DNA of 64,000 bases, from assembly GCA_026770705.1 (NCBI GenBank), contig JANJGN010000052.1, forward strand, positions 3,038,001-3,102,000, written 5' to 3'. The notes beneath the pieces are model-generated. The model had not been told where the DNA came from. It searched no databases and saw only the letters and a program-made list of their open reading frames with translations. The position numbers were made by a program, and so were the translations under genes. Source of the DNA: Isurus oxyrinchus. Its lineage: Eukaryota. This document shows positions 25,740-58,264 of the stretch, piece after piece; within the stretch, counting starts at the first letter, position 1; every line of letters starts with the position of its first letter.

Positions 25740-25779
25740 ATGATCGGGAAATCTTACTTCCTCCTGTCACTTCTCCAAG
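25740..25779 (+). CDS. Gene A signal-peptide exon MIGKSYFLLSLLQ (phase 1)
   Basis: acgATG context; CAAG|GTAAT donor; joins to VGLS|QEW. Confidence 0.85.
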
Positions 25780-28700
25780 GTAATATCATCGTCAGCTTGG
25801 ACAGATTTATGGTAAAGGGTCTTTGTAAAGATCATTCTTATTGATCTCTGATTGGGAACCGATTCAGCAGTGAGCCAGTGTACAAACTCATACCAAGTCC
25901 CATTCACCCATCACCCCTGTGCTCACTGATATACACTGACTCCCTGTCTGACAGCAGAATTGGAGAAGAATAGTGATCTCAGAGCGTTGTAGGGGCTGGA
26001 GACGGTTACACAATTAGGCAGGATTGTAGCAGCTAGAGCAGAATCTTAAACTTCAGGTGATGTCGGCTGTTGGTCAGTGAGAGATGGGGAGTGATGGGTT
26101 GAGCAGAAAATCAGGGAAAGAACCTGGGGGATGAAATCTATCCAGGTACTAGGAGTCTGATAGCAATATCCTGAAATTTGTGTCTTTTGCTGATTTTAAC
26201 CAGAATTTCCCATGAAGACAACACAGCAGCTCCTAGAATAGACAGGCTGTTCAGTGTCACACTTCCTGTCCATTCACACCATGCCAGAAACTTTGATTAG
26301 GGAGCAAGATCACTGAAAGAGAGAGGGGAGGCAAAGCTGTCTGTGTATTCTGAGTTATCATGATTGTCTCTGATCTGCTGCAGAGTTTAAATTTCACAGA
26401 ATCTGGGCACTTTGCAGCTCAGAGAGAGACCATTGACTCACTGCCTGAAAGGGCGGTGGAAGCAGATTCAACAGGAACTTTCAGAAGGGGAACTGGATAA
26501 ATACTTGAAGGGAAATTTGCAGGGATGTGTGAAAGGTGCTGGAGAGGAATTGGGAAAGAGCCAGCACATGCACGATGGGTCAAATGAGCTCCTCCTGTGC
26601 TGTATCATTCAACAATCAGAGAATTTTAGATCCTTATCAGCAAATCTTCAGAATCCTGCTGAATCATGGATATTTCAGAAGGACAGTTAACAAGAGGTTT
26701 CTGGTATCAGCGTTTCATATGGGACTCAGTTCAGTTTGAACAAATAAACAACGTCATCTTTGAAAGTCATGAGCCCACCACAGTGGCACCTCCGACACAT
26801 GCAGAGCTCAGGCTAGAGGCGCTTTGTTAGTGTGTTTCACAGTGTCTGCTGGAGTAGGGTCAGTGCTGAGCTTGGGGACAAGTCAGTCTACAATGCTGCA
26901 TCGGAATCAACAATACAACAATATGGGGTTTGGATCAGAAATAATCCCTTAGACAATGAGGATCCAAAGAGATTCCTTAGACAATGAAGATCCAAAGAGA
27001 TTCCTTAGACAATGAGGATCCAAAGAGATTCCTTAGACAATGAGGATCCAAAGAGATTCCTTAGACAATGAAGATCCAAAGAGATTCCTTAGACAATGAG
27101 GATCCAAAGAGATTCCTTAGACAATGAAGATCCAAAGAGATTCCTTAGACAATGAGCATCCAAAGAGATTTCTTATTCCATTGGTTGTCTAATTGTGGTC
27201 CATGATTTTCCAAGGGGTCCTTGGCAGAATCAAATTATCGAGCAAGAGAGAGAAAAACACTGGAGAGAACGGGAAAGGTGGGTTGGGTTCATGACTTTCA
27301 AAGATGGTGTTGTTTATTTGTTCAAACTGAACTGGGCCCCACACAAAACGCTGATACCAGAAACCTCTTGTTCCCTGTCCTTCTGAAATATCCGTGACTT
27401 CAGCAGGATTCTGAAGAGTTGCTGATGGAGGAACAGGCACCCAATTTTTTTTTTGGTGAAGTTCAGTCAGGAACCAATAACGTTTTGTTTCAAGTAGACG
27501 TTGTTTGAGATTCAAGACACTTGCTAAGAGAATAAGGTGACAAGATTCCATTTTTGCACAGACACCCTGGGGTCTGCCTCGGCCCCCCCCAAAAATGACA
27601 GAAGCAGCAAATTGTGCTGCGAGCCCCCCGCGCACGTGTGAACGTCCCGAGGTCTGTGAGGACTCGGCGTTCCGGCTCTCTGCTCACGATGCACGAGGTC
27701 AGTCTGGATCTCAGGCCAAGGTGGGATGGAGGAACACAGGGAGAACGGATACAGATACATCATTCACCAAAAGTTACACCACACATTAACCAGGTCAGAA
27801 AAATAGCAGTCCAAACGCTAGACTTTATTCCGAAAGGGAGTGAATTGAAAAGCAGGGAAGTGATGGAAAACCTGTATTGAACCTTGGTCAGTCTACATTG
27901 ACCGTGCTGCCTGCAGTTCTGGTCACCGTGTTATAAAAAGGATATAGAGACACTGGAGAGGGCGCAGAGAAGATTGACAATGATGATCCCAGAAATGTGG
28001 GGGTAAACATATGAGGACAGGACTGACGGGCTGGGTCTCTCTTCCCTAGAAGAGACAAGGCTGAGGGGATGACCTAATCCAGGTGTTTAAAACTGAGAAA
28101 GGTTTCGATGGAGTGGATACAGAGAGAGTGTTTCCTCTTGTTGGGAGAGGAGACGAGAACTAGGGGCCCTCAATATGAGATCATCACTGATAAACCCAAT
28201 GGGGAATTCCGGAGAAACGTCTTTACCCAGAGAGTGGGGAGAATGTGGAACTCGCTCCCACAGGGAGTGGCTGGGGTGAATAGTATTGATGTATTTAAGA
28301 CGGAACCTGGATTAACACATGAGGGAGAAAGGAACATAGGGGTATGATGGTAGGTTCAGAGGAAAGTTTTTAGTTGACTGGGTAGACAGAGAATATTTCC
28401 CCTTGTGGGGAGGAGAATAACTAGAGGCCGAGTGATTGGTGATTCCTTAAACATTGAAGAGAGAATGAACACCAATCAGATTGAATCAGATTAGCCAATC
28501 AGCTGTGTTGAAGAGCAGACAGGAATGTTAGGCTAATTAGTGATTCATGACGGTGATAATGGGGGGAGTTCTGAGGGCTCCTAATCCATTGTCCTGTCTT
28601 GTAAATCAGCACTGAATGGATCTCAATTGGTGTGTCTTGTAGACACTGTGTTGGGAGGAAGACTGGCTTCATTAAACAGGGTCCTGAGGACCATGAGCCA

Positions 28701-30761
28701 ATGTAGAATGAACTTGTCCACTCCTGTGTCCAGGATTCACTTCCATCCATTGTGAAACCTTGGGGAGTTCCTTGTGTGTCCTGCAGATGGTCCACACTGC
28801 AGCCACTGTGCCCCAGTGATGGAGGGGGTGGATATCGAGTCTAGTGGATCTACAAACCTTCCAGAGTTAAATATTGAGATTTCTCTCCCCAGTTGGACTG
28901 TCACAAGAGTGGAAAGGTGACACTCCACAAGAGGTGTCAGCGCAGGAAGGTTCGTGTGTACAGATTCCATGTCATTACAGTTATCCAGCAAAATTTGAAA
29001 ACCAACAACGAGGTGGAGTCTGGTTTAATAATGAGAAACAGATTCCCTGGGCTCCCATTGCCTTTCACTCCAAGGATCACAGTCACGAGTTACCACGGTT
29101 CCACAATCGGACCCGGCTGTCTGGAGACCTGAAAGATGGCGACTGTTCCCTGATTATAAACAACATCAGACGGGATGATGCAGGACCTTATTTTTTCAGA
29201 ATAGAATTTGACAATTGTCCGAGCCATAACTATTACCCTGTAACCCAGCTTCACGTTTCTGGTAAGTGCTGTGTTATAATTACTCAACAATTCACATTCA
29301 ACACTCGATGGGAAATAACACAAACTGTGACGTTTACATATTAACACAAAACACAGCTTATTATAACACACTGTCTGATTCTCAATAACCTGGTGATCGC
29401 TTCCAGTTCAGTCCTAAAGCAACCTTTAATACTCACTTTAATATCAATGATTAAATGTATTCCACTCCCATCGATCTTTCTAATCGTGTCTAACAGTCTA
29501 TCAGGATCGTTAAAACATCTCAGTTCTGATATCATCCTTGTAAAAGTGCTTTCTCTTGTGGGACTGTGATTTCTATTTGAACTGATGCTTCACGTTATAT
29601 TTCTCTAAAAGGATCCATTCTCTGTCTGTTAGATTTCACAGATAAAACCACGATATTCCCTGCTGAAATTATTGCAGGAAAGCGTGTGGATGTAAGCTGC
29701 ACCTTCAACACAACGTGCAATGGAACAACAGCACCTGTCTTAACCTGGGACACTCCCATTGACGTACCTGGATCAGTCTCAAACACTGTAACTCAGCATG
29801 GTGTCACTCTGACCTATACTTCTGTTCTGACCCTGATCCCATCACTCAAACACCACAGACACACTCTCAGCTGCAGAGTGAGATATCCATCTGTTTCATC
29901 GGAGCGGACCCTCGTACTAACTGTGCAAGGTAATTACATACACCTTTCATTCTATATTAGCTAGAGAGCTCCACATAGTACACTGCAAGATCCCACAAAT
30001 TCATTGTGTTTAGCTACAAATCAATCGTCTTTAACTGATACAAATTCACCTCTGACACTGCAGCAGTCTCTCAGTACTGAACCTCTGACAGTGCAACACT
30101 CCCTCAGTACTGATCCACTGACAGTGCAGCACTCCCTCAGTACTGACCCTTCGACAGTGCGGCACTCCCTCAGTACTGACCCTTCGACAGTGCAGCACTC
30201 CCTCAGTACTGAATCTGTGACAGTGCAACACTCCCTCAGTACTGATCCACTGACAGTGCAGCACTACCTCAGTACTGACCCTCCGACAATGCAGCACTCC
30301 CTCAGTACTGAACTGAGGTGTCTGGCTGGATTATGGGCTTTGTGGTGAAAGAACCTATATTGATATCACACCTTTCACATTCTCAGTGTCTCTCAAAGTG
30401 CTTCACAGTCAGTGTAAGTTAATTGATGTTTATTTGTTTTTAGATGCACCACAGAATCTCTCAATTACTTCTCTTGGTATGATTAACTCTTCATCGATCA
30501 ATATAATTGAGGGGAATTCTGCAGTGATAATCTGCTCTGTCGAGAGCTTCCCAGCTTCTAACCTGACATGGCGACATCTTAATGTCCCAATGAACAGAAC
30601 AAGTTCCAACAATGAGCTGTGGTTGGTGATTCCTCACGTTACATCCAGGGCCACTGGAGACTATCAGTGTGTGGCAGAGAATGAACATGGAGCAGTGGAG
30701 GGATTCATAACCATCACTGTGGAATGTGAGTTAATGCAAACTTCAACATCACTTTCACACA

Positions 30762-30825
<64 letters not shown>

Positions 30826-33800
30826 CACACACATGCACTCGTGTAGACACATACATGCACATTTACACACACAAACATACGCATGCAAAAATATACACAG
30901 AAACATACACACACTCAACTCACACACACACACTCACACATGCACACACATACACATACACATGTACACACATTCACTCATGCACAGAAATATACACAAA
31001 GACACACTCACATATGCGCAAACACATACACACATGCACACACAGACACATGCATGCATACTCACACAAACATACTCACATATGTAGAAACACAAACACA
31101 TACACATAAACACGCGTGAGGTCCCTCTTCTCTCTCAGGGCCGCACTGGAGTCTCAGTATCAGCTTCGATTCTGTGTTGAAGGAAGGTAAACTCCAGATC
31201 AACAAGACCCTGAATTGGATGAGCAACCTCCTGAACAGAGAATGCTAGATTTACCCCTCAGTGCTCCATCAATCAAATACAATTCAATGGCTTTCAATCC
31301 CTTGGGGGCATCTTGAGAGTGTTAAAGAATGTTTCTTTCATTCTAGATGGACAGCAACTCTACTGGTGGGAGAATGCAACTGCAGTGTGACAGTTTACAT
31401 AGGAAACGCCCATTATAAATGTGACAGTAATTTTTCATGAGGGAAGGTACCTGGAAAGGCATTCCAACATCAGATACAGAGAGATGATGCATGGAGTCTT
31501 GCTGTGCACTATGCTTGCTCACATTAAAATCTTTATTTATTTTTAGACGCACCCAGAATCTCTCAATTACTTCTCTTGATATGATTAACGCTTCATCGAT
31601 CAATATAATTGAGGGGAATTCTGCAGTGATAATCTGCTCTGTCGAGAGCTTCCCAGCTTCTAACCTGACGTGGCGACATCTTAATGTCCCAATGAACAGA
31701 ACAAGTTCCAACAATGAGCTATGGTTGGTGATTCCTCACGTTACATCCAGGGACACTGGAGACTATCAGTGTGTGGCAGAGAATGAACATGGAGCAGTGG
31801 AGGGATTCATAACCATCACTGTGGAATGTGAGTGTACACAGACTTCAACATCTCTCTCAGATTTGAACACATATACACCAATGCACATCCACACGCACAC
31901 ACAAGCACTCACTGCACTGGAGTCTCGGTATCAGCTCCAATTCTGGATGGAACGAAGGTAAACTACAGATCAACAAGTCCCTGAACTGGATGAGCAACCT
32001 CCTGAACAGAGAACTGTATATTTACCCCTCAGTGCTCCATCGATCAAACATTGCCTGTCAAGCCCTTGGGGACATCCTGAGGATGTGAAAGGAAGTTCCT
32101 TTCATTCGAGGTGGACAGCGCCTCTACTGGTGGGAGAATGTAACTGCAGTTTGACTGTTTACATAGGCAGTGCCCACTATAAATTTGACAGTGGAAGTTA
32201 TATGGAGTGGAGGGACCTGGCTATGCATACAGACATCAGATACAGAGAGATGATGCATGGAGTCTAGCTGTAAACTGTGCTTGCTCACATTAAACACTTG
32301 ATTTGTTCTTAGATGCACCACAGAACCTCTTATTTACTTCTCTTGAAATGATTAATGCTTCATCGATCAATATAATTGAGGGGAATTCTGCAGTGATAAT
32401 CTGCTCTGTCGAGAGCTTCCCAGCTTCTAACCTGACGTGGCGACATCTTAATGTCCCAATGAACAGAACAAGTTCCAACAATGAGCTGTGGTTGGTGATT
32501 CCTCACGTTACATCCAGGGAAACTGGAGACTATCAGTGTGTGGCAGAGAATGAACATGGAGCAGTGGAGGGGTTCATAACCATCACTGTGGAATGTGAGT
32601 GTGGAGATACATTTGTTTGTTTGTTGTTTCCGTGGTCTCCGTGGAGCCATTGGGATCGTGTTGTTTTTAATCCAGTTTTCTTCAATCCTCGTTCAGTCCA
32701 CGTTATCCACACATCCAATTTTTCCTCTCCCTTTCTGTTTTTGGTCTCAGTTTCTCCTTCAATGGTTGTCAGGACAAGGCTGTCAGGTCTTTGTTTCCAA
32801 TCTCCGTACTTGATGACCTTTCTCTCTCTAACTGTCCTGAACAACCCTTTTAATCGCTGAACTTCTCATTCTTTAATTGATAAATATTATATATAAATGT
32901 TACATGGATTACTTTGAAATGCAACACTTGTATTCATAAATTGCTTAGAAATTACTAAACATTCAACAGCCAGTGAAGCATTATCGAAGTGAGCTCACTG
33001 TTGAAATGTAGGAAACACAGGTACTGATTTGTGCACAGCAAGATCCCGCAAACCACCGTGTGATAATGACCTGATAGTCGATTATTTCAGTGAGGTTGGT
33101 TGTTACATGTGTAGACACTACATACCCTTTAGGGAGGGAAGCATGTCTCGGTGTGGATGTGACTCCAGTCTCAGACACCAACATGGTTAACTCTTACCTG
33201 CCCTCTGAACTGGTCTCCCAGTTTGGGACAAACCAGTGGTTCAGGAGGAAGACCCCCCACCACCTTCTCAAGGGGAAACTAGGGATGGACAATAAATGTC
33301 AGCATTGCCCGAGAATGAGTATTTAAACACTGAGTGAGTGTATCGCTTCTCGAGATACATCGGAGCATCATTGTAAACCTGTAGTGCAGTAATTAATGGC
33401 TGTTTTTACAGGTAGAGACTCCAGTAAATGGACAGTAGGATTGTTCACGGCTGGGATCATGTTGAGTGTTTTCCTGGCTGGAATCTTCATCTTCATCTGT
33501 GTGAGAAAGTAAGTCTGAAGATTTAACTTGATTTTAATATAAACATTTGCTTCAATGTTCTTTCCTGAAGTCGGTGATTGTTTCCCTTGTGTTAAGCGCC
33601 AGATGCCTCTCCGTAACTGGTCTCTTTATCCCTTACGATCCAGACAGTGTTTTTCATTGCCCGTTATCCAGATGAATAATAATCAGTTGCTGTGATCTGG
33701 AAGGCGCTGCCTGAAAGGGCGCTGGAAGCAGATTCAATAGGAACTTTCAAAACGGGAATTGGATAAATACTTGAAGGGGGAACATTTGAAGGGCTACGGG

Positions 33801-46918: not shown

Positions 46919-47351
46919 GTAAGTAACGGAACAATTGGAATTCACTTCCACCACCAACACCGTCCTTTGTTGATGTTGTGACTTTATAAAGACAGATTCC
47001 AATGATTGATGCCTTTGAAAGATTTCTACTGTTTATTGAGATCTGGGTGTGAGGCTCAAGTCTGTCGTACAGAACATCTTTCTAGCTCAAGGGATGAGGA
47101 AAATGGGATGCCCTGAGCTGGTGAAAGGTGCTATAGAAATGCAAGCCCTTCATTGTTTTTCATTCTTAAAGCCTTTTAACTCTCTGCAGAACACCTATCA
47201 TCCCACAGGAAATCAAATTAGTCTTTGAAGTCATTGTCTAAAAGGAGTTCTGATCTCTCGAGAGCTGTCGGACAAGAGGTGAGGTCTCATTAATTCCTTT
47301 CTCTTTCACAGTTTGAGAGTGAGAAGTGGATGGAATATCTGGGAGTGGACA

Positions 47352-47391
47352 ATGATCAGGAAATCTTACTTCCTCCTGTCACTTCTCCAAG
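47352..47391 (+). CDS. Gene B signal-peptide exon MIRKSYFLLSLLQ
   Basis: Paralog of 25740-25779. Confidence 0.85.
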
Positions 47392-50300
47392 GTAATATCA
47401 TCATCAGATTTAATGTTAATAGTCTCTGTCAAGGATCATTCTTATTGAGCTGTGATTGGGAACCGATTCAGCAGTGATCCAGTGTACAAACACACACCAA
47501 GTCCCATTCACCCATCACCCCTGTGCTCACTGATATACACTGACTCCCTGTGTGACAGCAGAATTGGAAGTGATCAGAGATCTCAGAGAGTTGTAGGGAC
47601 TGGAGGACGTTACAAAGTTCAGCAGAATTGTAGCAGCGAGAGCAGGATCTTAAAATTCAGGTGCTGTCAGACGTTGGTCAGTGAGCGATGGGGAGTGATG
47701 GGTTGAGTAGAGAAGCAAAGATAAAAACTGGGGGATGAAGACTATCCTGCTGCGAGGTCTCCGATAGCAATGGCCTGAAATTTGTGTCCTTTGCTGCCTT
47801 TATTCAAAATTGTCCATGAAGACAACACAGCAGCTCCTAGAATAGACAGGCTGTTCAGTGTCACACTTCCTGTCCATTCTCACCTTGCTAGATACTTCAA
47901 TAAGGGAACAAGATAACTGAAAGAGAGAAGGGAGGCAAAGCTGTCTGTGTGTAAAACTGTCAAATATTCTGAGTTATCATGAGTGTCTCTGATCTGCTGC
48001 AGAGTTTAAATTTCACAGAATCTGAGCACTTTGCAGCTCAGAGAGAGACCATTGACTCACTGCCTGAAAGGGCGGTGGAAGCAGATTCAACAGGAACTTT
48101 CAGAAGGGGAACTGGATAAATACTTGAAGGGAAATTTGCAGGGATGTGCGAAAGGTGCTGGAGAGGAATTGGGAAAGAGCCAGCACATGCACGATGGGTC
48201 AAATGAGCTCCTCCTGTGTTGTATCATTCAACAATCAGACAATTTAAGACCCTTGTCAGCAAATCTTCAGAATCCTGCTGAATCACAGATGTTTCAGAAG
48301 GACAGGGAACAAGAAGTTTCTGGTATCAGCGTTTCATGTGGGGCCCAGTTCAGTTTGAACAAATAAACAACACCATCTTTGAAAGTCATGAACCCACCAC
48401 AGCGGCACCTCCAACACATGCAGAGCTCAGGCTAGAGGCACTTTGTTAGTGTGTTTCACAGTCTCTGCTGGAGTAGGGTCAGTGCTGAGCTTGGGGACAA
48501 GTCAGTCTACAATGCTGCATCGGAATCAACAATACAAAAATATGGGGTTTAGATCAGAAATAATCCATTAGACAATGAGGATCCAAAGAGATTCCTTAGA
48601 CAATGAGGATCCAAAGAGATTCCTTAGACAATGAGGATCCAAAGAGATTCCTCAGACAATGAGGATCCAAAGAGATTCCTTAGACAATGAGGGTCCAAAG
48701 TGATTCCTTAGACAATGAAGATACAAAGTGCACCAATCAGATTGAACCAGATTAGCTAATCAGCTGTGTTGAAGGGCAAACAGGAATGTTAGGCTAATTA
48801 GTGATTCATGACGGTGATAATGGGGGGAGTTCTGAGGGCTCCTAATCCATTGTCCTGTCTTGTAAATCAGCACTGAATGGATCTCAATGGGTGGGTCTCG
48901 TAGACACTGTGTTGGGTGGAAGACTGGCTTCACTAAGGGGAAGCGGCAGTAGAGAGGCATTGTCACTGGGCTAGTATTCCAGAGGCCCAGGGTGATGCTC
49001 TGGGGCCCTGGGTGTAAATCCCATCACAGCAGATGAATGGGATTAAAAAGCCTGGTTCACTGATCCCCTTCAGGGAAGGAAATCTCCACCCTTACCGAGT
49101 CTGGCCTACATGTCACTCCAAACCCACAGCAATACAATTGATTCTTAAATGCCTCTGATGGACATGGGATGGGTAATAAATGCTGGGCACATCCCATGAA
49201 CGGATAATTTGAAAAACACATGACTTGGAGACACTGTGTTGGGTGGAAGACTGGCTTCACTAAACAGGGTCCTGAGGACCATGAGCCAATGTAGAATGAA
49301 CTTGTCCACTCCTGTGTCCAGGATTCTCTTCCATCCATTGTGAAACCTTGGGGAGATCCCTGTGTGTCCTGTAGATGGTCCACACTGCAGCCACTGTGCC
49401 CCAGTGATGGACGGGGTGGATATCGAGTCTAGTGGATCTACAAACCATCCAGAGTTAAATATTGATATTTCTCTCCCCAGTTGGACTGTCACAAGAGTGG
49501 AAAGGTGACACTCCACGAGAGGTGACAGCGCAGGAAGATTCGTGTGTACAGATTCCATGTCATTACAGTTATCCATCACATTTGGAAAGCCAACCACGAG
49601 TCGGAGTCTGGTTTAATAATGAGAATCAGATTCCTGGATCTCCCATTGCCTTTCACTCCAAGGATCACAGTCACGAGTTACCACGGTTCCACCATCGGAC
49701 CCGGCTGTCTGGAGACCTGAAAGATGGCGACTGTTCCCTGATTATAAACAACATCAGACGGGAAGATGCAGGACCTTATTTCTTCAGGATAGAATTTGAC
49801 AGCAGTAATAGTTACAACTACTATCCTGTAACCCAGCTTCACGTTTCTGGTAAGTGCTGTGTTATAATTACTCAACAATTCACATTCAACACTCAATGGG
49901 AATTAACACAAACTGTGACGTTTACATATTAACACAAAACACAGTTTATTATAACAGACTGTCTGATTCTCAATAACCTGGTGATAGCTTCCAGTTCAGT
50001 CCTAAAGCAACCTCTAATACTCACTTTAATATCAATGATTAAATGTATTGACTGTGTCCATCAAAGTTATCAGGTTATCCACTCTCATCGATCTCTCTAA
50101 TCCTGTTTAAAATAATTTCCTGATCATTGTATCCTCTCAGTTCTGATATCATCCTTGTAAAAGTGCTTTCTCTTGTGGGACTGTGGTTTCTATTTGAACT
50201 GATGCTTCACGTTATATTTCTCTAAAAGGATCCATTCTCTGTCTGTTAGATTTCACAGATAAACCCACGATATTCCCTGCTGAAATTATTGCAGGAAAGC

Positions 50301-53300
50301 GTGTGGATGTAAGCTGCACCTTCAACACAACGTGCAATGGAACAGCAGCACCTGTCTTAACCTGGGACACTCCCACTGACGTACCTGGATCAGTCTCAAA
50401 CACTGTAACTCAGCATGGTGTCACTCTGACCTATACTTCTGTTCTGACCCTGATCCCATCACTCAAACACCATGGACACACTCTCAGCTGCAGAGTGAGA
50501 TATCCATCTGTTTCATCGGAGCGGACCCTCGTACTAACTGTACAAGGTAAGTACATACACCTTTCATTCTATATTAGCTAGAACAGTGTAGATAATGCAC
50601 AGCAGGATCCCACCAACAGCACTCCCTCAGTACTGACCCTCCCACATGCAGCACTCCCTCAGTACTGACCCTCCCACATGCAGCATTCCCTCAGTACTGA
50701 CCCTCCCACATGCAGCACTCCCTCAGTACTGACCCTCCCACATGCAGCATTCCCTCAGTACTGACCCTCCCACATGCAGCACTCACTCAGTACTGACCCT
50801 CCCACAGTGCAGCACTCCCTCAGTACTGACCCTCCCACATGCAGCACTCACTCAGTACTGACCCTCCCACAGTGCAGCATTCCCTCAGTACTGACCCTCC
50901 CACATGCAGCACTCACTCAGTACTGACCCTCCCACAGTGCAGCACTCCCTCAGTACTGACCCTCCCACATGCAGCACTCACTCAGTACTGACCCTCCCAC
51001 AGTGCAGCACTCCCTCAGTACTGACCCTCCCACATGCAGCACTCCCTCAGTACTGACCCTTTGACAGTGCTGCACTACCTCACTATTGGCTTTAAACTAA
51101 ATAGAGTGTGGGGCGAATGTTTCTGGAGAGGGTATATGTACAGTTACAAACCAAAAGGATTTATTAGCATTGCAGGATAGCTGTTTTGGCAATGATACCC
51201 AGTGTGTGACAGGAAGGGACACAGTGTCCAAACATAAAAATACATCAGCAAATAGTGTCAGAGGGGGGGAAATGATAAAAAGACAAAATTAATGGCTCTT
51301 TACTTAAATGCACAATGTATTTGGAATGCTGACCTTTATTTCAAAGGGAATGGAGTATAAAAATAGGGAAGCCTTGCTAAAACTATACAAGGCACTAGTT
51401 AGACCACACCTAGAATACTGTGAACAGTTTTGGTTCCCTTATCTAAGGAAAGATGTACTGGCATTGGAGGCAGTCCAGAGAAGGTTCACTAGGTTGATCC
51501 CAGTAATGGAGGGATTTTCATATGAGGAGAGGTTGAGTAGGATGGGCCTGTACTCATTGGAGTTTAGGAGAATGAGAGCTGACCTTATTGAAACATATAA
51601 GATTCTTAGGGTGCTTGACAGGGTAGATGCTGAGAGGTTGTTTCCCCTTGTGGGAGAGTCTAGGACCAGAGGGCATAATCTCAGAGTAAGGGGTCACCCA
51701 TTTAAGACAGAGATGAGGAGTTTCTTCTCTCAGAGGGTAGTGAATGTGTGGAATTATTTACTGCAGAGAGCTGCAGAGGCTGGGTCATTAATTATATTCA
51801 AGGCTGAGATACACAGTTTTTTAATCAGTCAGGGAATCAAAGGCTATGGGGAAGAGGCAGGAAAGTGGAGTTGAGGATTGTCAGATCAGCCATGGTGTCA
51901 CTGAATGGCGGAGCAGAGTTGATTGGCCAAATGGCCTCCTTCTGCTCTGATGTCTTGTGGTCTTATGGTCTTATCACCCTCCAACAGTGCAGAGCTCCCT
52001 AATTACTGACCCTCCGACAGTGCAGCACTCCCTCAGTACTGACCCTCTGACAGTGCAGCACTCACTCAGTACTGACCCTCCGACAGTGCAGCACTCCCTC
52101 AGTACTGACCCTCCAACAGTGCAGAGCTCCCTAATTACTGAACATCCAACAGTGCAGCACTTCCTCAGTACTGACCCTCCAACTGTGCAGAGCTCCCTAA
52201 TTACTGACGCTCCGACAATGCAGCATTCCCTAAGTACTGACCCTCCAACAGTGCAGCACTGCCTCAATACTGACCCTCCAACAGTGCAGCACTGTGTCAA
52301 TACTGACCCTCCAACAGTGCAGCACTCCCTCAGTGCTGACCCTCCGACAGTGCAGCACTCCCTCACTACTGACCCTCCGTCAGAGCAGAGCTCCTAATTA
52401 CTGACCCTCCAACAGTGCAGCACTCCCTCAGTACTGACCCTCCAACAGTGCAGAACTCCCTAATTACTGACCATCCAAAAGTGCAGCACTCCCTCAGTAC
52501 TGACCCTCCGACAGTGCAGCACTCCCTCAGTACTGACCCTCCAACAGTGCAGAACTCCCTAATTACTGACCATCCAAAAGTGCAGCACTCCCTCAGTACT
52601 GACCCTCCGACAGTGCAGCACTCCCTCAGTATTGATCCTCCGACAGAGCAACACTCCCTCAGTACTGTCCCACCGACAGTGCAGCACTCCCTCAGTACTG
52701 ATCCTCCGACAGTGCAACTCTCCCTCAGTACTGTCCCACCGACAGTGCAGCTCTCCCTCAGTACTGACCCTCCGACAGTGCAGCACTCCCTCAGTACTGA
52801 TCCTCCGACAGTGCAACACTCCCTCAGTACTGTCCCACTGACAGTGTAGCACTCCCTCAGTACTGATCCTCCGACAGTTCAACACTCCCTCAGTACTGTC
52901 CCACCGACAGTGCAGCTCTCCCTCAATACTGACCCTCCAACAGTGCACCACTCCATCAGTACTGAACCTTCAACAGTGCAGCACTCCCTCAGTACTGATC
53001 CTCCAACAGTGCAGCACTCCATCAGTACTGATTCTCCGACAGTGAAGTCCTCGCTCAGTACTGACTATGCGGCAGTGAAGCTTTCACAGTACCCACCCAC
53101 CATCAGTACAGCAGGTCCTCAGTACTCACCCTCCAACAGTGCAGCACTCCCTCAGTACTGAACTGAAGAGTCTGCCTGAATTATGTGCTCTGTGGTGAAG
53201 GATTGATATCACACCTTTAACATTGTCAGGGTCTCTGAAAGTGCTTCACAGTCAATGTAAGTAACTGATCTTTATTTGTTTTTAGATGCACCACAGAATC

Positions 53301-53747
53301 CCTCAATTACTTTTCATGATATGATTAACGCTTCATCGATCAATATAATTGAGGGGAATTCTGCAGTGATAATCTGCTCTGTCGAGAGCTTCCCAGCTTC
53401 TAACCTGACGTGGCGACATCTTAATGTCCCAATGAACAGAACAAGTTCCAACAATGAGCTGTGGTTGGTGATTCCTCACGTTACATCCAGGGACACTGGA
53501 GACTATCAGTGTGTGGCAGAGAATGAACATGGAGCAGTGGAGGGGTTCATAACCATCACTGTGGAACGTGAGTTAACACAAATTGCAATAACACTGTCAC
53601 ATACAGATGCACACACACACACATAGACATACACATGCACACACACTCACTCATGAACAGATGTATACAAACAGGCACACGCACACATGCGCAAACACAT
53701 ACACACACACACGCACACACAAACACACTCACATGTGCAGAAACACG

Positions 53748-53785
<38 letters not shown>

Positions 53786-56700
53786 TGAGGTTCACTCTCC
53801 TCTCTCAGGGCTGCACTGGAGTCTCGGTATCAGCCCTGATTCTGTGTTGAAGGAAGGTAAACTCCAGATCAACAAGACCCTGAATTGGATGAGCAAGCTC
53901 CTGGACAGAGAATTGTAGATTTACCCCTCAGTGCTCCATCGATCAAATACAATTCATTGCCTGTCAAGCCCTTGGCGAATTCCTGAGGATGTGAATGGAA
54001 CTTTCTTTCATTCTAGATTGACAGCACCTCAACTGGTGGGGGAATGCAACTGCAGTGTGACAGTTTACATAGGCAGTGTCCATTATAAATGTGACAGAGG
54101 AACTTATTCTGAGGAAAGGTGCCTGGAAATGCATTCAGACATCAGATACAAAGAGATGATACATGGAGTCTTGCTGTGCACTGTGCTTGCTCACTCTAAA
54201 ATCTTTATATGTTTATAGACGCACCACAGAATCTCTCAATTACTTCTCTTGATATGATTAACACTTCATCAATCAATATAATTGAGAGGAATTCTGCAGT
54301 GATAATCTGCTCTGTCGAGAGCTTCCCAGCTTCTAACCTGACGTGGCGACATCTTAATGTCCCAATGAACAGAACAAGTTCCAACAATGAGCTGTGGTTG
54401 GTGATTCCTCATGTGAGATCCAGGGACACTGGAGACTATCAGTGTGTGGCAGAGAATGAACATGGAGCAGTGGAGGGGTTCATAACCATCACTGTGGAAC
54501 GTGAGTTACACAGAATTCAACATTCTGTTTTTATTAGCTCATGGGATGTGGGTAGTGTTGACAAGACCAGAAATCATTGCCCATCTGCAACTGCCCCTTG
54601 AGAAGGTGGTGGTGAGCTGCCTTCTTTAACCACTGCAGTCCATGTGGTGTAGGTACACCCACAGTGCTGTTAGGGAGGGAGTTCCAGGATTTTGACCCAG
54701 CGACGGTGAAGGAACGGCCGATATAGTTCCTAGTCACAGGGCAGACCACCACCTCAAGTTCGCCTCCAAGTCAAACACCTCACTGACTTGGAACTGTCTC
54801 GGTGGAAGAGGTTAAGAGTTTGGAAGGTGCTGTCGAAGGAGCCTCGGTGAGTTGCTGCAGTGCATCTTGTAGATGGTGCACACACTGCTGCCATTGTGTG
54901 CCAGTGGTGGAGGGTATCAATGTTTATGCTGGTGGATGGGCTGTCGATCAAACAAGCTGCTCCTGGATGGTGTCGAGCTTCTTGAGTGTTGTTGGAGCTG
55001 CACTTATTCAGGCAATTGGAGATTATTCCATCACACTCCTGACTTGTGCCTTGTCGATGGTGGACAGGCTTTGGGGAGTCAGGAGGTGAGTTATTCACCG
55101 CAGAGTTCCCAGCCTCTGACCCGCTCTTGTAGCCACATTATTTCCTGTTGCTGGGTTGTTGCCAGGGCCAATAGCCTTTGCTGTATCCAGTATCATCAGC
55201 TGATTCCTGATGTCACATGGAGTCAATCGAATTGTCTGAAAGCTGACATCTGTGATGCTGGGACCCTCTGGAGGAGGCCGAGATGGAGCATCCACTCAGC
55301 AGTTCTGGCTGAACATGGTTGCCAATGCTTCAGCCTTGTTGTTTGCACTGATGTGCTGAGCTCCCCCATCATTAAGGATGGGGATATTTGTGGAACATTC
55401 TCCTCCTGTTAGATCTTTAATTGTCCATCACCATTCATGACTGGATGTGGCAGGACTGCAGAGCTTAGATCTGACCTGTTGGTTGTGGGATCGCTTTGTC
55501 TGTCGATAGCATGTTGTTTCCGCTTTTTGGCAGGTATGTCGTCCTGTGTGTCACCTCAGCAGCTTGGCACCTCTGTTATATGTGAATCCTCCTTATAGAA
55601 ACCTGCATGTACATGGATATTATCAATAAATATTACATAGATAAATGTTGTTTGTATAGACCTTTCATGCATAGACAATATCACTTCACAAGTTCAGAAT
55701 TACTACATGTACATAGGGAACCATTCTCAAACTGTACCGGAGTCATTCATTGGCTGATTTTACAGGGCGAGATTCCAATGAATGGAAAGCAGGATTGCTT
55801 GGAGCTGGAATCTGTTTGAGTGTTGGACTGAGTGGATTCTTCATCTTCAAGTGTGTGAGAAAGTAAGTGTGAAGGTTTAATTGGTTGTTTTTGAACATGT
55901 TTTCTTCAACCTTCTCTCCTTATAGAAAGAACTTGCATTTCTATAACATCTTTCACAACCCAAAACCCTTCACAACCCCTGAAGAGCTTTGATGTTCACT
56001 CATTGTTTAACATCTCATCCAACACTCAATGTTTCACAACTCAGTCCTGTAACAGGCAGTGTTGACCCGGACCATAAAATACCTTGTGACTTCCTGAGGA
56101 TGTGAAAGGGGATATATAAATGAAGACATTTCTTTTGTTAGTGAATGCAATCTCTTTCCATTTTCAGTGTCTAACTCACTCTCTCTCTTACCTCCACTAA
56201 TGCTCTCCTTCTCATTCTCTCTCTCTCTCATTCGCTCTCTCCCCAATCTCCACTAATGCTCTCCTTCTCATTCATTCTCTTGTCCTCTTACACGTTGTTC
56301 AGTCTCTCACAATTTTAAGGAGCGCTGAGCAACATCTGCTCCATCAGAAGATCTACCTCAACACCTGGAGCGAGCAATGAATTGAAACTCGCTCAACGAC
56401 TGTTCAGATTTACACAGGAATCACGACACAGAGTCAGGACACAAAGGGTTAACAGTTTGCTTACAACACAACACTAAGGCCTTACGTTTCAGTGAAAGGG
56501 TTTTCACAATTGTTCCCCAATTCCTCAGTTTGTCTCACAGAGACACATCAACCCTTTCTCATTAAATACACAGAGGGAGCAGCACAGGAAGAGGTCATTC
56601 AGCCCAAGCAGAGGGTGTGGGAAGTTCCTCCCCAGGCGAGCAGTCGGACAGGTACTGGGTAAGTAACGGAACGATTGGTACTCACTTCCACCACCAACAC

Positions 56701-58264
56701 CGTCCTTTGTTGATGTTGTGACTTTATAAAGACAGATTCCAATGATTGATGCCTTTGAAAGATTTCTACTGATTATTGAGATCTGGGTGTGAGGCTCAGG
56801 TCTGTTGTACAGAACATCTTTCTGGGAAAATTATGCAGACAGGTTACACACAGTCTACGATAATATTCCCTCAGGTCTAGAAGATTAAGGAGTGATCTAA
56901 TTGAGGGATTCAAAATGATTAAACACTCGAAAGGGTCGATAGAGAGAAGCTATTCCCTCGGGTGGGGGTGGGTGGTGGGGGTCGGGTGGAGTCCAGAACA
57001 AGGGGGCCGGAACTTCAGATTGGAGCCAGGCCGTTCAGGGGTGATGTCAGGAAGCACTTCTTCACACAAAGGGGAGTGGAAATCTGGAACTCTCTCCCCA
57101 ATAATCAAACCCAACACCGAATACACATCATGTTGATTGTCACTCTGTCCATTTCCATCTCTATTACAGAAGAGAGGCGAGGGGAAAGCAGGAATCAAAT
57201 CGAACCATCGTGTTGATGAATATCGAGATCCTGTTTATGAAAACTGTGAGCGTGGTTGGGCTTTGAGGAATCAGGTGAGTCACACACCACAGGATCCCCA
57301 GCCTCTCAGCTGCTCCAGTAGCCTGGTTATTGATATGGCTGCTCCAGTCCTGTATCTGCAATGTTTTATACAGTCACTCCCAAACCCAACCAAACTCACA
57401 CCCAACACCGTTCAGAATCAATAATCAAACCCCGTTCAGTATCAATAATCAAACCCCGTTCAGTATCAATAATCAAACGCCGTTCAGAATCAATAATCAA
57501 ACCCCGTTCAGAATCAATAATCAAACACCGTTCAGAATCAATAATCAAACCCCGTTCAGAATCAATAATCAAACCCCGTTCAGTATCAATAATCAAACCC
57601 CGTTCAGAATCAATAATCAAACACCGTTCAGAATCAATAATCAAACCCCGTTCAGAATCAATAATCAAACCCCGTTCAGTTTCAATAATCAAACCCCGTT
57701 CTGTATCAATAATCAAACCCCGTTCAGAATCAATAATCAAAACCCATTCAGTTTCAATAATCAAACCCCGTTCAGTATCAATAATCAAACCCCTTTCAGA
57801 ATCAATTATCAAACCCTGTTCAGTGTAAATAATCAAACCCCTTCCAGTATCAATAATCAAACCCCATTCAGAATCAATAATCAAACCCCGTTCAGAATCA
57901 ATTATCAAAACCTGTTCAGAATCAATAATCAAACTCCGTTCAGAATCAATAATCAAACCCCGTTCAGAATCAATAATCAAACTCCGTTCAGTATCAATAA
58001 TCAAACCCCGTTCAGAATCAATAATCAAACCCTGTTCAGTATCAATAATTAATGTATCTATTGTGGGTGGAATTTTCGATTTGGATTAATAATACTAAAC
58101 ACTGATCACTCTGATTGTCACTCTGATCATTTCTGTTTCTATTACAGAAGAAAGATGAGAAGGATCTGGAAATGAAATCTAACCGCGGAGTCAATCCTGA
58201 TACAGATGATGATCTTTACGCAAACTGTGATTTTGCCAAGGATTCTGTTTATGGGAATTTATAA
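47352..58264 (+). CDS. Gene B: Siglec-family receptor with a divergent TM and YxN/ITAM-like tail (SP-V-C-C2x2-TM-cyt); 557 aa in the preferred model
   Basis: join(47352-47391,49481-49849,50250-50546,53286-53567,54219-54500,55766-55862,56574-56658,57170-57274,58148-58264) is open throughout (1674 nt). Confidence 0.8.
48567..48720 (+). repeat. 28-bp minisatellite, about 5 units
   Basis: Same unit as 26946. Confidence 0.85.
49481..49849 (+). CDS. Gene B Siglec V-set exon
   Basis: SCVQIPC...GDCSLII...YFFRIE; 369 nt. Confidence 0.95.
50250..50546 (+). CDS. Gene B Ig domain 2 exon
   Basis: 297 nt; 4 aa differences from gene A. Confidence 0.93.
50617..51082 (+). repeat. 32/33-bp minisatellite array
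   Basis: cagcactccctcagtactgaccctcccacatg units. Confidence 0.9.
51308..51965 (+). mobile_element. Relatively intact CR1 LINE 3' end inserted in the minisatellite
   Basis: [24 protein letters not shown]...RLSRMGLYSLEFRRMRADLIE...FFSQRVVNVWN; ends in a tcttatgg-type tail. Confidence 0.9.
51976..53160 (+). repeat. 33-bp minisatellite array (about 35 units)
   Basis: Tandem units. Confidence 0.9.
53286..53567 (+). CDS. Gene B C2-set exon 1
   Basis: 282 nt, phase 1-1. Confidence 0.93.
54219..54500 (+). CDS. Gene B C2-set exon 2
   Basis: 282 nt, phase 1-1; intact counterpart of 31547-31827. Confidence 0.93.
54540..55570 (-). mobile_element. CR1-like LINE fragments
   Basis: SKSWNSLPNSTVGVPTPHGLQ on the - strand, same family as 18560-18995. 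Confidence 0.8.
55766..55862 (+). CDS. Gene B transmembrane exon (R)RDSNEWKAGLLGAGICLSVGLSGFFIFKCVRK
   Basis: ttttacag acceptor, AA|GTAAGT donor, 97 nt as in gene A. Confidence 0.88.
56574..56658 (+). CDS. Gene B candidate cytoplasmic exon 1 (copy of the 5' exon module), GSSTGRGHSAQAEGVGSSSPGEQSDRYW
   Basis: acacag acceptor, TGG|GTAAGT donor, 85 nt, phase 2-0; exactly restores the frame to the next exon. Confidence 0.55.
57170..57274 (+). CDS. Gene B cytoplasmic exon KRGEGKAGIKSNHRVDEYRDPVYENCERGWALRNQ
   Basis: ctattacag acceptor, CAG|GTGAGT donor, 105 nt, phase 0-0. Confidence 0.75.
57405..58049 (+). repeat. 24-bp minisatellite (aatcaaaccccgttcagaatcaat)n, about 27 units
   Basis: Tandem units; gives the INNQTPFR pseudo-ORF. 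Confidence 0.92.
58148..58264 (+). CDS. Gene B terminal exon KKDEKDLEMKSNRGVNPDTDDDLYANCDFAKDSVYGNL*
   Basis: ctattacag acceptor, phase 0, TAA at 58262-58264, followed by unique UTR-like sequence. Confidence 0.8.
   Translation, partial: KKDEKDLEMKSNRGVNPDTDDDLYANCDFAKDSVYGNL

What the first reader, a model, noticed from the sequence alone, without database searches (positions are those of the whole stretch)
25740..58264. Candidate paired Siglec receptor system in a probable cartilaginous fish
Seen: genes A and B have near-identical ectodomains (D2 differs at 4 of 99 aa, C2 domains almost identical, both keep the F-strand Arg in YFFRIE), but diverge at the TM and have non-homologous tails. 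A has LLYANI plus TEYTQI; B has VYENC, LYANC and SVYGNL. Established: mammalian Siglec-5/14 and Siglec-11/16 are inhibitory/activating pairs kept alike by gene conversion, with the activator using a TM basic residue and DAP12. Inference: this is an independently evolved pair in which the partner carries its own tyrosine tail.
Basis: partly seen in the sequence, partly recalled or inferred. Interest (0 to 1): 0.85.

Follow-up and report, generated by a model that had tools for sequence, protein, structure and literature searches.

The report
Shark Siglec-like neighbours with different tails
Two neighbouring shark immune-receptor genes of the sialic-acid-lectin (Siglec) type share most of their outer part, but one ends in a classic inhibitory tail and the other in an old, conserved double-tyrosine tail of unknown sign that other shark genomes already annotate but nobody seems to have studied.

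Summary
The observation largely holds. Gene A (25740-36045) and gene B (47352-58264) are adjacent Siglec-like genes in a lamniform-type shark. D2 differs at 4 of 98 aa and the C2 exons are 96-97% identical. V differs at 18 of 123 aa, mostly in loops around the sialic-acid site. The TM exons are only 75% identical. Both assembly gaps lie between the genes.

B's 3' splice chain (C2, TM, e7, e8, e9) appears as GT..AG joints in RNA-type contigs from four studies. B reads as 557 aa, the length and architecture of RefSeq "Siglec-13" in basking and whale shark.

- The tails are not wholly unrelated: B's DDLYANCDFAK matches A's ITIM region at 11 of 17 residues.
- B's C-terminus, [DN]-hydrophobic-Y-[AE]-N-C, seven residues, hydrophobic-Y-x-N-hydrophobic, stop, recurs in 22 shark and ray sequences. 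It is ancient, not newly evolved here.
- B has no DAP12-type TM charge and no canonical ITAM.
- Earlier scan notes report TM-arginine Siglec-like genes elsewhere in this genome.
- V-domain and tail histories disagree (AU p=0.005), which fits exon exchange.

Whether B activates or inhibits is untested. My best guess is coupling to Grb2-type adaptors.

The parts
25142..25454 (+). Leader module upstream of gene A's signal exon. It is a paralogue of the module that supplies B's coding exon e7.
   Evidence: 96% identical to 56510-56823. Further copies lie at 46786-47083, 61072-61378 and 63306-63613.
25740..25779 (+). Gene A signal-peptide exon (MIGKSYFLLSLLQ), ending in phase 1.
   Evidence: ATG followed by a CAAG|GTAATA donor. 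The same leader is present in the shark RefSeq proteins.
28893..29261 (+). Gene A V-set exon with YFFRIE.
   Evidence: Pfam V-set and Ig_CD22. Best PDB sequence hits are Siglec-7, MAG and Siglec-5 at E~1e-13.
29633..29929 (+). Gene A D2 exon (C2-set_2).
   Evidence: Pfam C2-set_2. Splice sites.
30444..30725 (+). Gene A C2 exon a.
   Evidence: Pfam Ig_3 and I-set. Boundaries.
31547..31827 (+). Gene A C2 exon b. It is 281 nt, one base short of its four paralogues, so it shifts the frame unless it is skipped or the deletion is an assembly error.
   Evidence: Alignment A1, column 27. A stop follows after 12 codons if the exon is read from the canonical acceptor.
32313..32594 (+). Gene A C2 exon c.
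33412..33508 (+). Gene A TM exon (…TVGLFTAGIMLSVFLAGIFIFICVRK).
   Evidence: Aligned to B's TM exon with the same 97-nt length and the same splice sites.
34202..34283 (+). Gene A cytoplasmic exon 1 (RKTATQERVSGTSDIALTPRSLSVKHQ).
   Evidence: Splice sites. It is 85-93% identical to the great white and basking shark A-type proteins.
35797..36045 (+). Gene A last coding exon, with ITIM LLYANI, ITSM-like TEYTQI and the stop codon.
   Evidence: It is 89% identical to the tail of great white XP_041037216.
39780..39930 (.). Assembly gap 1, in the intergenic stretch between A and B.
43685..43851 (.). Assembly gap 2, in the intergenic stretch between A and B.
47352..47391 (+). Gene B signal-peptide exon (MIRKSYFLLSLLQ).
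   Evidence: Aligned to A's signal exon. Boundaries.
49481..49849 (+). Gene B V-set exon with YFFRIE.
   Evidence: Pfam hits. AlphaFold model with pLDDT 89, whose top 47 PDB structural hits are all Siglecs. It is 91% identical to the basking shark ortholog.
50250..50546 (+). Gene B D2 exon.
53286..53567 (+). Gene B C2 exon a.
   Evidence: Contigs lie on it with no differences, and joints link it to the next C2 exon.
54219..54500 (+). Gene B C2 exon b.
   Evidence: GT..AG joint 54500>55766 in all four runs.
55766..55862 (+). Gene B TM exon (…AGLLGAGICLSVGLSGFFIFKCVRK).
   Evidence: Joints on both sides. It is 100% identical to great white XP_041037162 over 31 aa.
56574..56658 (+). Gene B exon e7, 85 nt (GSSTGRGHSAQAEGVGSSSPGEQSDRYW). 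Including it sets the tyrosine reading frame of e8 and e9.
   Evidence: Joint 55862>56574 in X4, X5 and X7. Joint 56658>57170 in X4, with matching loose ends in X1. Frames.
57170..57274 (+). Gene B exon e8 (…DEYRDPVYENC…).
   Evidence: Joints. Its 5' third and upstream intron end are a duplicate of those of e9. It is 94% identical to great white XP_041037225.
58148..58264 (+). Gene B exon e9 coding part (…NPDTDDDLYANCDFAKDSVYGNL, stop). The 3' UTR runs on to at least 59100.
   Evidence: Joint 57274>58148 in X4 and X7. A contig covers 58145-59100. The motif is conserved in 22 sequences.

Best explanation
A and B are adjacent members of a large Siglec-like gene cluster found in sharks and rays. 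It is built from interchangeable exon cassettes.

Gene A has a leader, V, D2, two or three C2 domains, a TM and a two-exon tail. The tail is the archetypal inhibitory Siglec tail: ITIM LLYANI followed 23 residues later by TEYTQI, expected to recruit SHP-1/2.

Gene B is 557 aa: leader, V, D2, two C2 domains, TM, e7, e8, e9. It is the ortholog of the gene that RefSeq calls 'Siglec-13' in other sharks.

The 5' blocks of A and B, from leader to C2, are 92-98% identical. I attribute this to tandem duplication plus later exon exchange. The TM and tail cassettes belong to two ancient classes.

B's tail has lost the ITIM features (Asp at -2, Cys at +3). It keeps three pY-x-N sites, and the last two have ITAM-like spacing and sit at the very C-terminus. 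The most likely mechanism is that Src-family kinases phosphorylate these tyrosines after sialoglycan engagement, and that they dock Grb2-family adaptors. This would resemble Shc pYVNV, the IgG-tail YxNM motif or DAP10 YINM. The signal would then be non-inhibitory: co-stimulatory or activating.

Shown here: the gene structures, splicing of B's 3' half, Siglec fold and sequence, orthology, motif conservation, and V/tail discordance. Inferred: sialic-acid binding, phosphorylation, adaptor choice and the sign of the signal.
For: - Structure and frames. B's coding sequence is 1674 nt, giving 557 aa.
- Splicing: GT..AG joints 54500>55766 (four runs), 55862>56574 (three runs), 56658>57170 and 57274>58148. 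Coverage is confined to exons.
- Siglec identity: Pfam V-set, Ig_CD22 and C2-set_2. PDB sequence hits are Siglec-7, MAG, Siglec-5, Siglec-8 and CD33. The model has pLDDT 89 and its top 47 structural hits are all Siglecs.
- Orthology: basking shark XP_078390089 has the same length and architecture, with V 91%, e8 86% and e9 82% identical. Great white XP_041037225 has the same 3' half, with TM 97% and e8 94% identical.
- Motif: [DN][ILV]Y[AE]NC, then seven residues, then [ILV]YxN[VILM], then stop, in 22 sequences. The spacing is 7 in 20 of 22. The -2 position of the last Tyr is S, A, P or V, so the conserved feature is YxN and not an ITIM.
- Mosaic divergence between A and B: dS is 0.146 for V, 0.026 for D2, 0.03-0.08 for C2 and 0.34 for TM.
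- V tree: tail type needs at least 8 changes, and monophyly of shark B-type V domains is rejected at AU p=0.005.
Against: - No read or contig was examined that joins B's V and D2 exons to its C2 and TM exons. I laid only 53200-59100.
- The great white model XP_041037225 attaches the same 3' half to a different, MAG-like V-D2 pair.
- The RNA runs are only guessed to be RNA. At least X4 carries great-white-like residues, so part of the splice evidence is from a sister species.
- Grb2 sites also serve inhibition in CD22 and FcgRIIB (my own knowledge).
- SVYGNL fits the loose ITIM consensus.
- V differs most in the BC loop, the C-C' loop and the start of strand G, so A and B may not share a ligand.
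- No binding or signalling data exist.
Confidence: 0.55

Rival explanations
1. B is also inhibitory or modulatory. Its terminal SVYGNL would act as an ITIM, and its YxN sites would recruit Grb2-SHIP complexes as in CD22 or FcgRIIB. A and B would then be two inhibitory variants with different ligand fine-specificity, not an opposing pair.
For: - SVYGNL fits (S/I/V/L)xYxx(I/V/L).
- B's LYANC region is homologous to A's ITIM.
- V differences cluster in loops that determine specificity.
- Scan notes report a separate TM-arginine class that could fill the activating role; I saw that class in other sharks.
Against: - Across 22 orthologs and paralogs, the -2 position of the last Tyr is S or V in only 11. 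The first Tyr has D or N at -2 and Cys at +3. ITIM features are therefore not what selection keeps.
- The ITSM-like TEYxQI of A-type tails is absent from B.
Confidence: 0.25
2. There is no functional pairing. The A-B likeness would be a by-product of tandem duplication and exon homogenisation in a birth-and-death cluster, and the true opposing partners of ITIM genes would be the TM-arginine, short-tail genes.
For: - The window holds at least four gene units and orphan tail cassettes.
- All five C2 exons are 97% alike by column, whichever gene they belong to.
- V identity between A and B (85%) is no higher than between B and A-type genes of sister species (90%).
- TM-Arg proteins exist in other sharks (P0006 and P0023), and scan note s1-868598 reports one in this genome.
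Against: - D2 at 98% nt and a dS of 0.026, set against 0.146 for V and 0.34 for TM, show exchange targeted to the ectodomain.
- Discordance between V and tail type recurs in several shark orders.
Confidence: 0.3
3. B's C-terminal tyrosines mainly act as YxxPhi sorting signals for endocytosis or recycling, so B would be a cargo or clearance receptor rather than a signalling one.
For: YGNL and its orthologous YxN[VIL] fit the YxxPhi pattern at the extreme C-terminus. Siglecs are known to be endocytic receptors (my own knowledge).
Against: The invariant Asn at +2 and the fixed 7-residue spacing of two tyrosines are not needed for AP-2 binding. They are typical of SH2 docking.
Confidence: 0.1
4. 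Gene B as drawn is an assembly chimera or a pseudogene.
For: The assembly is a draft with six gaps. A 33-bp minisatellite of about 2.5 kb lies between B's D2 and C2 exons. Gene A's second C2 exon has a 1-nt deletion.
Against: - B lies in gap-free sequence.
- Every exon is open and every splice site is canonical.
- The coding sequence gives 557 aa, exactly as in the basking and whale shark orthologs.
- The 3' half is spliced in RNA-type contigs.
- Gene A has the same order of D2, minisatellite, C2.
Confidence: 0.05

Closest known systems
Automatic RefSeq models 'sialic acid-binding Ig-like lectin 13': Cetorhinus maximus XP_078390089, Rhincodon typus XP_048476476, Chiloscyllium punctatum XP_072409740, Heptranchias perlo XP_067831312. 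Also the 3' half of Carcharodon carcharias XP_041037225.
   Same: They have the same architecture: leader, V, D2, two C2 domains, TM with FIFKCV, e7, e8, e9. The basking and whale shark proteins have the same 557-aa length. The same C-terminal YANC-x7-YGN[VL] module is present.
   Different: These are names given by a pipeline with no functional study. They are not orthologs of primate Siglec-13. The great white model joins this 3' half to a different, MAG-like V-D2 pair.
Mammalian Siglec-5/Siglec-14 and Siglec-11/Siglec-16 paired receptors (PMC4042635)
   Same: These are neighbouring Siglec genes with an ITIM-bearing member and a partner that lacks a working ITIM. Their ectodomain exons are homogenised by gene conversion.
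   Different: In mammals the first two domains are over 99% alike. The partner has a TM basic residue, a short tail and signals through DAP12. Here V is 85% alike, B has no mid-membrane charge, and B has a 102-residue tail with tyrosines of its own.
CEACAM1/CEACAM3 pairs and the Xenopus CEACAM pairs (PMC5112662, PMC2832619)
   Same: An ITIM/ITSM receptor is paired with a relative whose own cytoplasmic tail carries an ITAM-like double tyrosine. No adaptor chain is needed. The pathogen-decoy reasoning applies to both.
   Different: This is a different Ig family and a different ligand-binding domain. CEACAM3's motif is YxxL-x7-YxxM, without the invariant Asn or Cys.
Grb2-docking pYxN motifs: CD22 YENV, Shc YVNV, the IgG/IgE tail-tyrosine YxNM motif, DAP10 YINM (my own knowledge; PMC2118534 concerns the IgG tail)
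   Same: Tyr-x-Asn with a hydrophobic residue at +3. B has three such sites, and the great white paralogue even ends in PVYVNV.
   Different: Binding is untested here. In CD22 the site supports inhibition, whereas in the IgG tail and DAP10 it amplifies activation. The motif therefore does not settle the sign of the signal.
CD33-related Siglec tails (ITIM followed by TEYSEI/V) and the L-MAG C-terminus
   Same: A's LLYANINF…TEYTQIRF has the same two-motif layout. The same layout occurs in 28 of the retrieved proteins, four of which have ELHYAS…TEYSEI tails of the mammalian kind.
   Different: Published work on fish Siglecs states that fish lack CD33-related Siglecs (PMC7226832, based on teleosts). 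Orthology of the shark cluster to the mammalian CD33-related cluster was not resolved here.

Membership tests
Siglec (I-type lectin) family | N-terminal V-set domain with the Siglec fold | tested here: met
   Pfam V-set and Ig_CD22. PDB sequence hits are Siglec-7, MAG and Siglec-5 at E~1e-13. The model has pLDDT 89, and its top 47 Foldseek hits are all Siglecs with TM-scores of 0.75-0.87.
Siglec (I-type lectin) family | Essential Arg on strand F (YxFR motif) | tested here: met
   YFFRIE is present in both genes. The Arg aligns with the YFFRME Arg of Siglec-7. It is at least 90% conserved across 30 relatives. It lies on model strand 98-106.
Siglec (I-type lectin) family | Three-Cys pattern in V (intrasheet pair plus one interdomain Cys) and an extra Cys in D2 | tested here: met
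   C22, C27 and C85 are invariant in alignment A2. D2 has three Cys. The disulfide pairing itself is inferred.
Siglec (I-type lectin) family | Binds sialylated glycans | not testable with these tools
   This needs glycan-array or cell-binding assays, with an Arg-to-Ala control.
CD33-related Siglecs | Membrane-proximal ITIM plus distal ITIM-like/ITSM motif | tested here: met
   Gene A has LLYANI and TEYTQI, with the tyrosines 23 residues apart. Gene B does not meet this feature.
CD33-related Siglecs | Phylogenetic grouping with the mammalian CD33-related cluster rather than with MAG, Siglec-1, CD22 or Siglec-15 | tested here: inconclusive
   The V domain is equally close to CD33-related Siglecs, MAG and sialoadhesin. 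It is clearly further from Siglec-15 (1.8e-7) and CD22 (2e-4). No named-outgroup tree was built.
Siglec-5/14-type paired receptors | Near-identical ligand-binding domains in the two partners | tested here: not met
   V has 18 of 123 aa differences and is more diverged than its flanking introns. Only D2 (4 of 98) and C2 are near-identical.
Siglec-5/14-type paired receptors | Partner with a basic residue inside the TM, a short tail and DAP12 coupling | tested here: not met
   B's only Lys follows 20 hydrophobic residues (FIFKCVRK) and is M, E or R in orthologs. B's tail is 102 residues long.
Siglec-5/14-type paired receptors | Ectodomain homogenised by gene conversion | tested here: inconclusive
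   dS is mosaic: 0.026 for D2, 0.146 for V and 0.34 for TM. The V tree is discordant with tail type, AU p=0.005. No orthologous DNA was available for a formal conversion test.
Siglec-5/14-type paired receptors | Opposite signalling by the two partners | not testable with these tools
   This needs reporter assays or SH2-binding assays.
Canonical ITAM | YxxL/I, then 6-8 residues, then YxxL/I | tested here: not met
   B has YANC, seven residues, then YGNL. The spacing fits (7 in 20 of 22 relatives), but +3 of the first Tyr is Cys in 20 of 22.
pYxN (Grb2-type SH2) docking sites | Tyr-x-Asn, ideally with a hydrophobic residue at +3 | tested here: met
   The sites are YENC, YANC and YGNL. In the last motif Asn is invariant in all 22 sequences; in the first motif it is Asn in 20 and Ser in 2. 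Only the motif was tested; binding was not.

The most novel reading that the evidence does not exclude
The C-terminal module [DN]-hydrophobic-Y-[AE]-N-C, seven residues, hydrophobic-Y-x-N-hydrophobic, stop, would define a third, undescribed signalling class of Siglec-family receptors. The other two classes are the ITIM class and the TM-arginine class. The module would date at least to the common ancestor of sharks and rays. It would work as a built-in ITAM-like or Grb2-docking activating or co-stimulatory tail. Repeated exchange of V and D2 exons between classes would keep inhibitory and non-inhibitory receptors matched in what they recognise, giving a three-way version of the paired-receptor principle long before the mammalian CD33-related Siglecs.
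Probability: 0.3. Interest if true: 0.75.

Novelty: new variant of a known kind. Interest (0 to 1): 0.55.

Why it matters
Published work on fish Siglecs is based on teleosts. It states that fish have only Siglec-1, CD22, MAG and Siglec-15 and lack inhibitory CD33-related Siglecs (PMC7226832). This locus, and more than 100 automatically annotated relatives in sharks and rays, show a large, fast-evolving cluster with CD33-type ITIM/ITSM tails in cartilaginous fish. They also show a second, strongly conserved double-tyrosine tail class that I could not find described in the library I searched.

If that tail proves to be activating, the paired-receptor logic would be much older than the mammalian Siglec-5/14 and Siglec-11/16 pairs. 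That logic is an inhibitory self-sensor shadowed by a look-alike that turns pathogen mimicry into an alarm. It would also be shown to use a built-in tail, as CEACAM3 does, rather than DAP12.

The locus also offers a clean natural case of exon-cassette reassortment. One 85-nt module serves as an upstream leader in neighbouring genes and as a frame-setting coding exon in B.

Tried and rejected
- **TM lysine as a DAP12-type charge.** Rejected. It sits at the cytosolic end after 20 hydrophobic residues and is M, E or R in orthologs.
- **Canonical ITAM.** Rejected, because +3 of the first Tyr is Cys.
- **Gaps breaking a gene.** Rejected; both are intergenic.
- **B as an assembly chimera.** Unlikely, given gap-free sequence and a 557-aa match to orthologs.
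- **Nucleotide homology between the A and B tails.** None above shuffled controls. Only the protein-level 11 of 17 match exists. BLASTP of e8 against e9 found nothing, but their 5' thirds and upstream intron ends are clear DNA duplicates: score 60 against 17±2.6 for shuffles.
- **The e7-skipped splice (55862>57170).** Seen only in X1. It shifts the frame to a 32-residue tail without tyrosines. I treat it as a minor or non-productive isoform.
- **Joined spliced proteins of A and B.** Never sent to any search or fold tool. Searches were exon by exon, by reference, or used database proteins.
- **Literature.** Six searches found no paper on shark Siglec pairs.

Full report
**What the window is.** The window is CpG-poor vertebrate DNA (CpG observed/expected 0.28) with six runs of N. 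The closest proteins are all from sharks and rays. The best matches are lamniform: great white and basking shark, at 90-100% per exon. "Cartilaginous fish" is therefore right. None of the annotated species matches exactly.

**The gaps.** The gaps at 39780-39930 and 43685-43851 lie between gene A (stop at 36045) and gene B (leader from about 46780), next to (CA)n-type repeats. No exon or intron of either gene touches them. Gene B lies wholly in gap-free sequence, 43852-64000. The flanks of both gaps are co-linear with a 96-98% identical paralogous stretch at 1-8872, which itself has a gap at the place of the first one. I did not read or fill the missing letters.

**Anatomy of gene A.**
- Signal exon 25740-25779, V 28893-29261, D2 29633-29929.
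- Three C2 exons: 30444-30725, 31547-31827 and 32313-32594.
- TM 33412-33508, cytoplasmic exon 34202-34283, last coding exon 35797-36045.
- All have canonical acceptors and GT donors, and phases fit.
- The tail reads …DELLYANINFSKLPSGDRTVHRSEDTEYTQIRFQKN. This is an ITIM plus an ITSM-like motif in the layout of CD33-related Siglecs.
- The middle C2 exon lacks one base compared with the other four C2 exons. If included, it gives a stop after 12 codons. Without it the coding sequence is in frame at 565 aa. I could not test whether this is a real defect, a skipped exon or an assembly error.

**Anatomy of gene B.**
- Signal 47352-47391, V 49481-49849, D2 50250-50546.
- C2 exons 53286-53567 and 54219-54500, TM 55766-55862.
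- e7 56574-56658, e8 57170-57274, e9 58148-58264.
- The coding sequence sums to 1674 nt, or 557 aa.
That 85-nt exon takes the frame from phase 2 after the TM exon to phase 0. Only then do e8 and e9 read …DEYRDPVYENC… and …NPDTDDDLYANCDFAKDSVYGNL-stop.

**RNA evidence.** I laid Logan contigs of four small runs from four studies on 53200-59100.
- Coverage sits on the exons and drops to about zero in the introns. The exception is a repeat at 54579-55563.
- Contigs show exact GT..AG joints: 54500>55766 in all four runs, 55862>56574 in three, 56658>57170 in one (plus matching loose ends in X1), and 57274>58148 in two.
- One contig runs from e8 through e9 to at least 59100.

Caveats on this evidence:
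- The runs are only guessed to be RNA, and contigs cannot give expression levels.
- Organism labels are coded. X4 carries great-white-like residues in e8 and e9, so part of the evidence is from a sister species.
- X1 also shows a joint that skips e7. This shifts the frame to a short tail with no tyrosine.
- I did not lay reads on the D2-to-C2 junction or on gene A; the cap was one call.

**How alike A and B are.**

| Region | nt identity | aa differences | dS |
|---|---|---|---|
| Upstream and first intron | 91-96% | n/a | n/a |
| V exon | 91.6% | 18 of 123 | 0.146 |
| V-D2 intron | 93.8% | n/a | n/a |
| D2 | 98.0% | 4 of 98 | 0.026 |
| C2 exons | 96-97% | 6-7 of 93 | 0.03-0.08 |
| TM exon | 75% | 11 of 31 | 0.34 |

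- Beyond the TM exon there is no DNA homology.
- V is the least conserved ectodomain exon and is more diverged than its flanking introns.
- On the AlphaFold model (pLDDT 89), 11 of the 18 changes fall in the BC loop and start of strand C, the C-C' loop, and the F-G loop and start of strand G. In Siglec-7 these are the regions that set glycan specificity (my own knowledge, using the alignment).
- The tails are not entirely unrelated. B's NPDTDDDLYANCDFAK aligns with A's NPDNTDELLYANINFSK at 11 of 17 residues. B's LYANC is therefore a decayed ITIM, with Asp at -2 and Cys at +3.
- e8 and e9 are partial duplicates of each other.

**Family membership.**
- Pfam gives V-set plus Ig_CD22 for V, and C2-set_2 for D2.
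- The best solved relatives of V are Siglec-7, MAG, Siglec-5, Siglec-8 and CD33 at E~1e-13. The YFFR Arg aligns to the essential Arg.
- D2 hits the second domains of MAG and CD33.
- The top 47 structural matches of the V model are all Siglecs.
- The three-Cys pattern is invariant.
- Subgroup placement is not resolved. V is equally close to CD33-related Siglecs, MAG and sialoadhesin, and further from Siglec-15 and CD22.

**Relatives.**
- A profile-free HMMER search found 1236 representative proteins at E up to 0.001, 32 of them below 1e-30.
- The named ones are automatic RefSeq models from sharks and rays, called Siglec-5, -8, -10, -12, -13 or -14, CD33-like or MAG-like.
- Gene B's exact architecture and 557-aa length recur in basking shark XP_078390089 and whale shark XP_048476476. 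The basking shark protein is 91% identical in V, 86% in e8 and 82% in e9.
- The same architecture, with other lengths, occurs in bamboo shark, epaulette shark, sawshark and sevengill shark.
- Great white XP_041037225 has the same C2, C2, TM, e7, e8, e9 half (TM 97%, e8 94%), but on a different, MAG-like V-D2 pair.
- B is therefore an old, conserved gene and not a local invention.

**The B-type tail.** In 22 shark and ray sequences the protein ends with [DN][ILV]Y[AE]NC, then seven residues, then [ILV]YxN[VILM], then stop.
- The spacing is 7 in 20 of 22 sequences.
- Cys is at +3 of the first Tyr in 20 of 22.
- Asn at +2 is invariant in the last motif. In the first motif it is Asn in 20 and Ser in 2.
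- The -2 position of the last Tyr is S, A, P or V.
- What is conserved is thus a double pYxN with ITAM-like spacing. It is neither an ITIM nor a canonical ITAM.
- Similar C-terminal IYxN[MV] endings occur in Siglec-like or CD22-like models of a turtle, a frog and two bony fishes.
- The A-type tail recurs in 28 retrieved proteins.
- A third class, with Arg inside the TM and a short tail, is seen in other sharks (P0006 and P0023). Earlier notes of this scan report it elsewhere in this genome (not tested here).

**Exchange between classes.** On a V-domain tree of 32 sequences, tail type needs at least 8 changes. Forcing the shark B-type V domains into one clade is rejected at AU p=0.005. Lamniform V domains are 80-91% alike whatever their tail. 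B-type orthologs of other orders are only 64-73% like B. Together with the mosaic dS, this supports reassortment or conversion of ectodomain exons between tail classes. It does not support the tight, recent homogenisation of V seen in Siglec-5/14.

**Mechanism.**
- Gene A is most likely a sialoglycan-binding inhibitory receptor acting through SHP-1/2.
- Gene B most likely presents the same kind of ectodomain, but on phosphorylation docks Grb2-family adaptors. It might also bind tandem-SH2 kinases weakly. The signal would be non-inhibitory.
- This rests on motif logic only.
- The inhibitory reading (Grb2-SHIP as in CD22, with SVYGNL as an ITIM) and the "no functional pairing" reading remain serious rivals.

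**Known or new.**
- The genes are visible in automatic annotation of sister species.
- Six full-text searches found no paper on them.
- The fish Siglec literature I found says fish lack CD33-related Siglecs (PMC7226832).
- The closest concepts are Siglec-5/14 (PMC4042635) and, for a partner with its own ITAM-like tail, CEACAM1/CEACAM3 (PMC5112662).
- I rate this a new variant of a known kind, of moderate interest.

**Limits.**
- The joined spliced models of A and B were not searched or folded; work was done exon by exon.

Noticed in passing
31547-31827: Gene A's middle C2 exon is one base shorter than the other four C2 exons (GCACC-CAG against GCACCACAG). It would give a stop after 12 codons if spliced in. 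It could be a dead exon that is skipped, or an assembly error.
   Followed up: partly
25142-25454, 46786-47083, 56517-56823, 61072-61378, 63306-63613: There are five copies, 94-96% alike, of a roughly 300-bp module. Four lie just upstream of signal-peptide exons. The fifth supplies gene B's coding exon e7. Great white and basking shark models read the same module as leader sequence, or run through it into the next gene's signal exon (P0165, P0196, P0206).
   Followed up: partly
17297-18164, 19024-19345, 20226-21104: These are A-type tail cassettes with no Ig or TM exons detected upstream of them in the window. In the 17.7-kb copy a stop codon replaces the ITIM tyrosine (LL*AN). The 20.7-kb copy reads LLYANP, so the ITIM +3 residue is lost, and is the best match to the tail of great white XP_041037177. 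Great white XP_041037216 strings two such cassettes in one model.
   Followed up: partly
1-8872 versus 36124-46076: This is a segmental duplication at 96-98% identity. The stretch downstream of gene A recurs at the start of the window, with an assembly gap at the same place in both copies. An A-like gene probably ends just before the window.
   Followed up: no
60840-64000: A third gene unit starts here, with two successive copies of leader plus signal exon (signal exons near 61660 and at 63899). Earlier scan notes describe a multi-V gene just beyond the window.
   Followed up: no
30048-30313, 34493-35606, 44047-44336, 50617-51082, 51976-53161, 62900-63090 (also 6480-6870, 17130-17560, 20190-20540): One 32-33-bp minisatellite family fills several introns and spacers of the cluster, in both orientations. 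It gives long spurious ORFs (…LSTDPPTVQHS…). It is a likely substrate for unequal exchange and a risk for misassembly.
   Followed up: no
57404-58049 and 59611-60967: A 24-bp tandem repeat (27 copies) fills the intron between B's e8 and e9. A 43-bp repeat (31 copies) follows B's 3' UTR.
   Followed up: no
55862>57170 joint (run X1): This is an alternative splice that skips e7. It shifts the frame and ends B after 32 residues with no tyrosine. It could be a signalling-dead isoform or a decay target.
   Followed up: partly
49481-49849 versus 28893-29261: The V exons of A and B (91.6% identical) are more diverged than the introns on either side (94-96%). The changes concentrate in the BC, C-C' and F-G/G regions. 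This hints at diversifying selection on the ligand-binding face.
   Followed up: partly
54579-55563 and 37250-38300, 1128-2170: These are fragments of a reverse-transcriptase-bearing retroelement. The copy in B's C2-TM intron draws very deep contig coverage in all four runs, as expected of an expressed repeat family.
   Followed up: no
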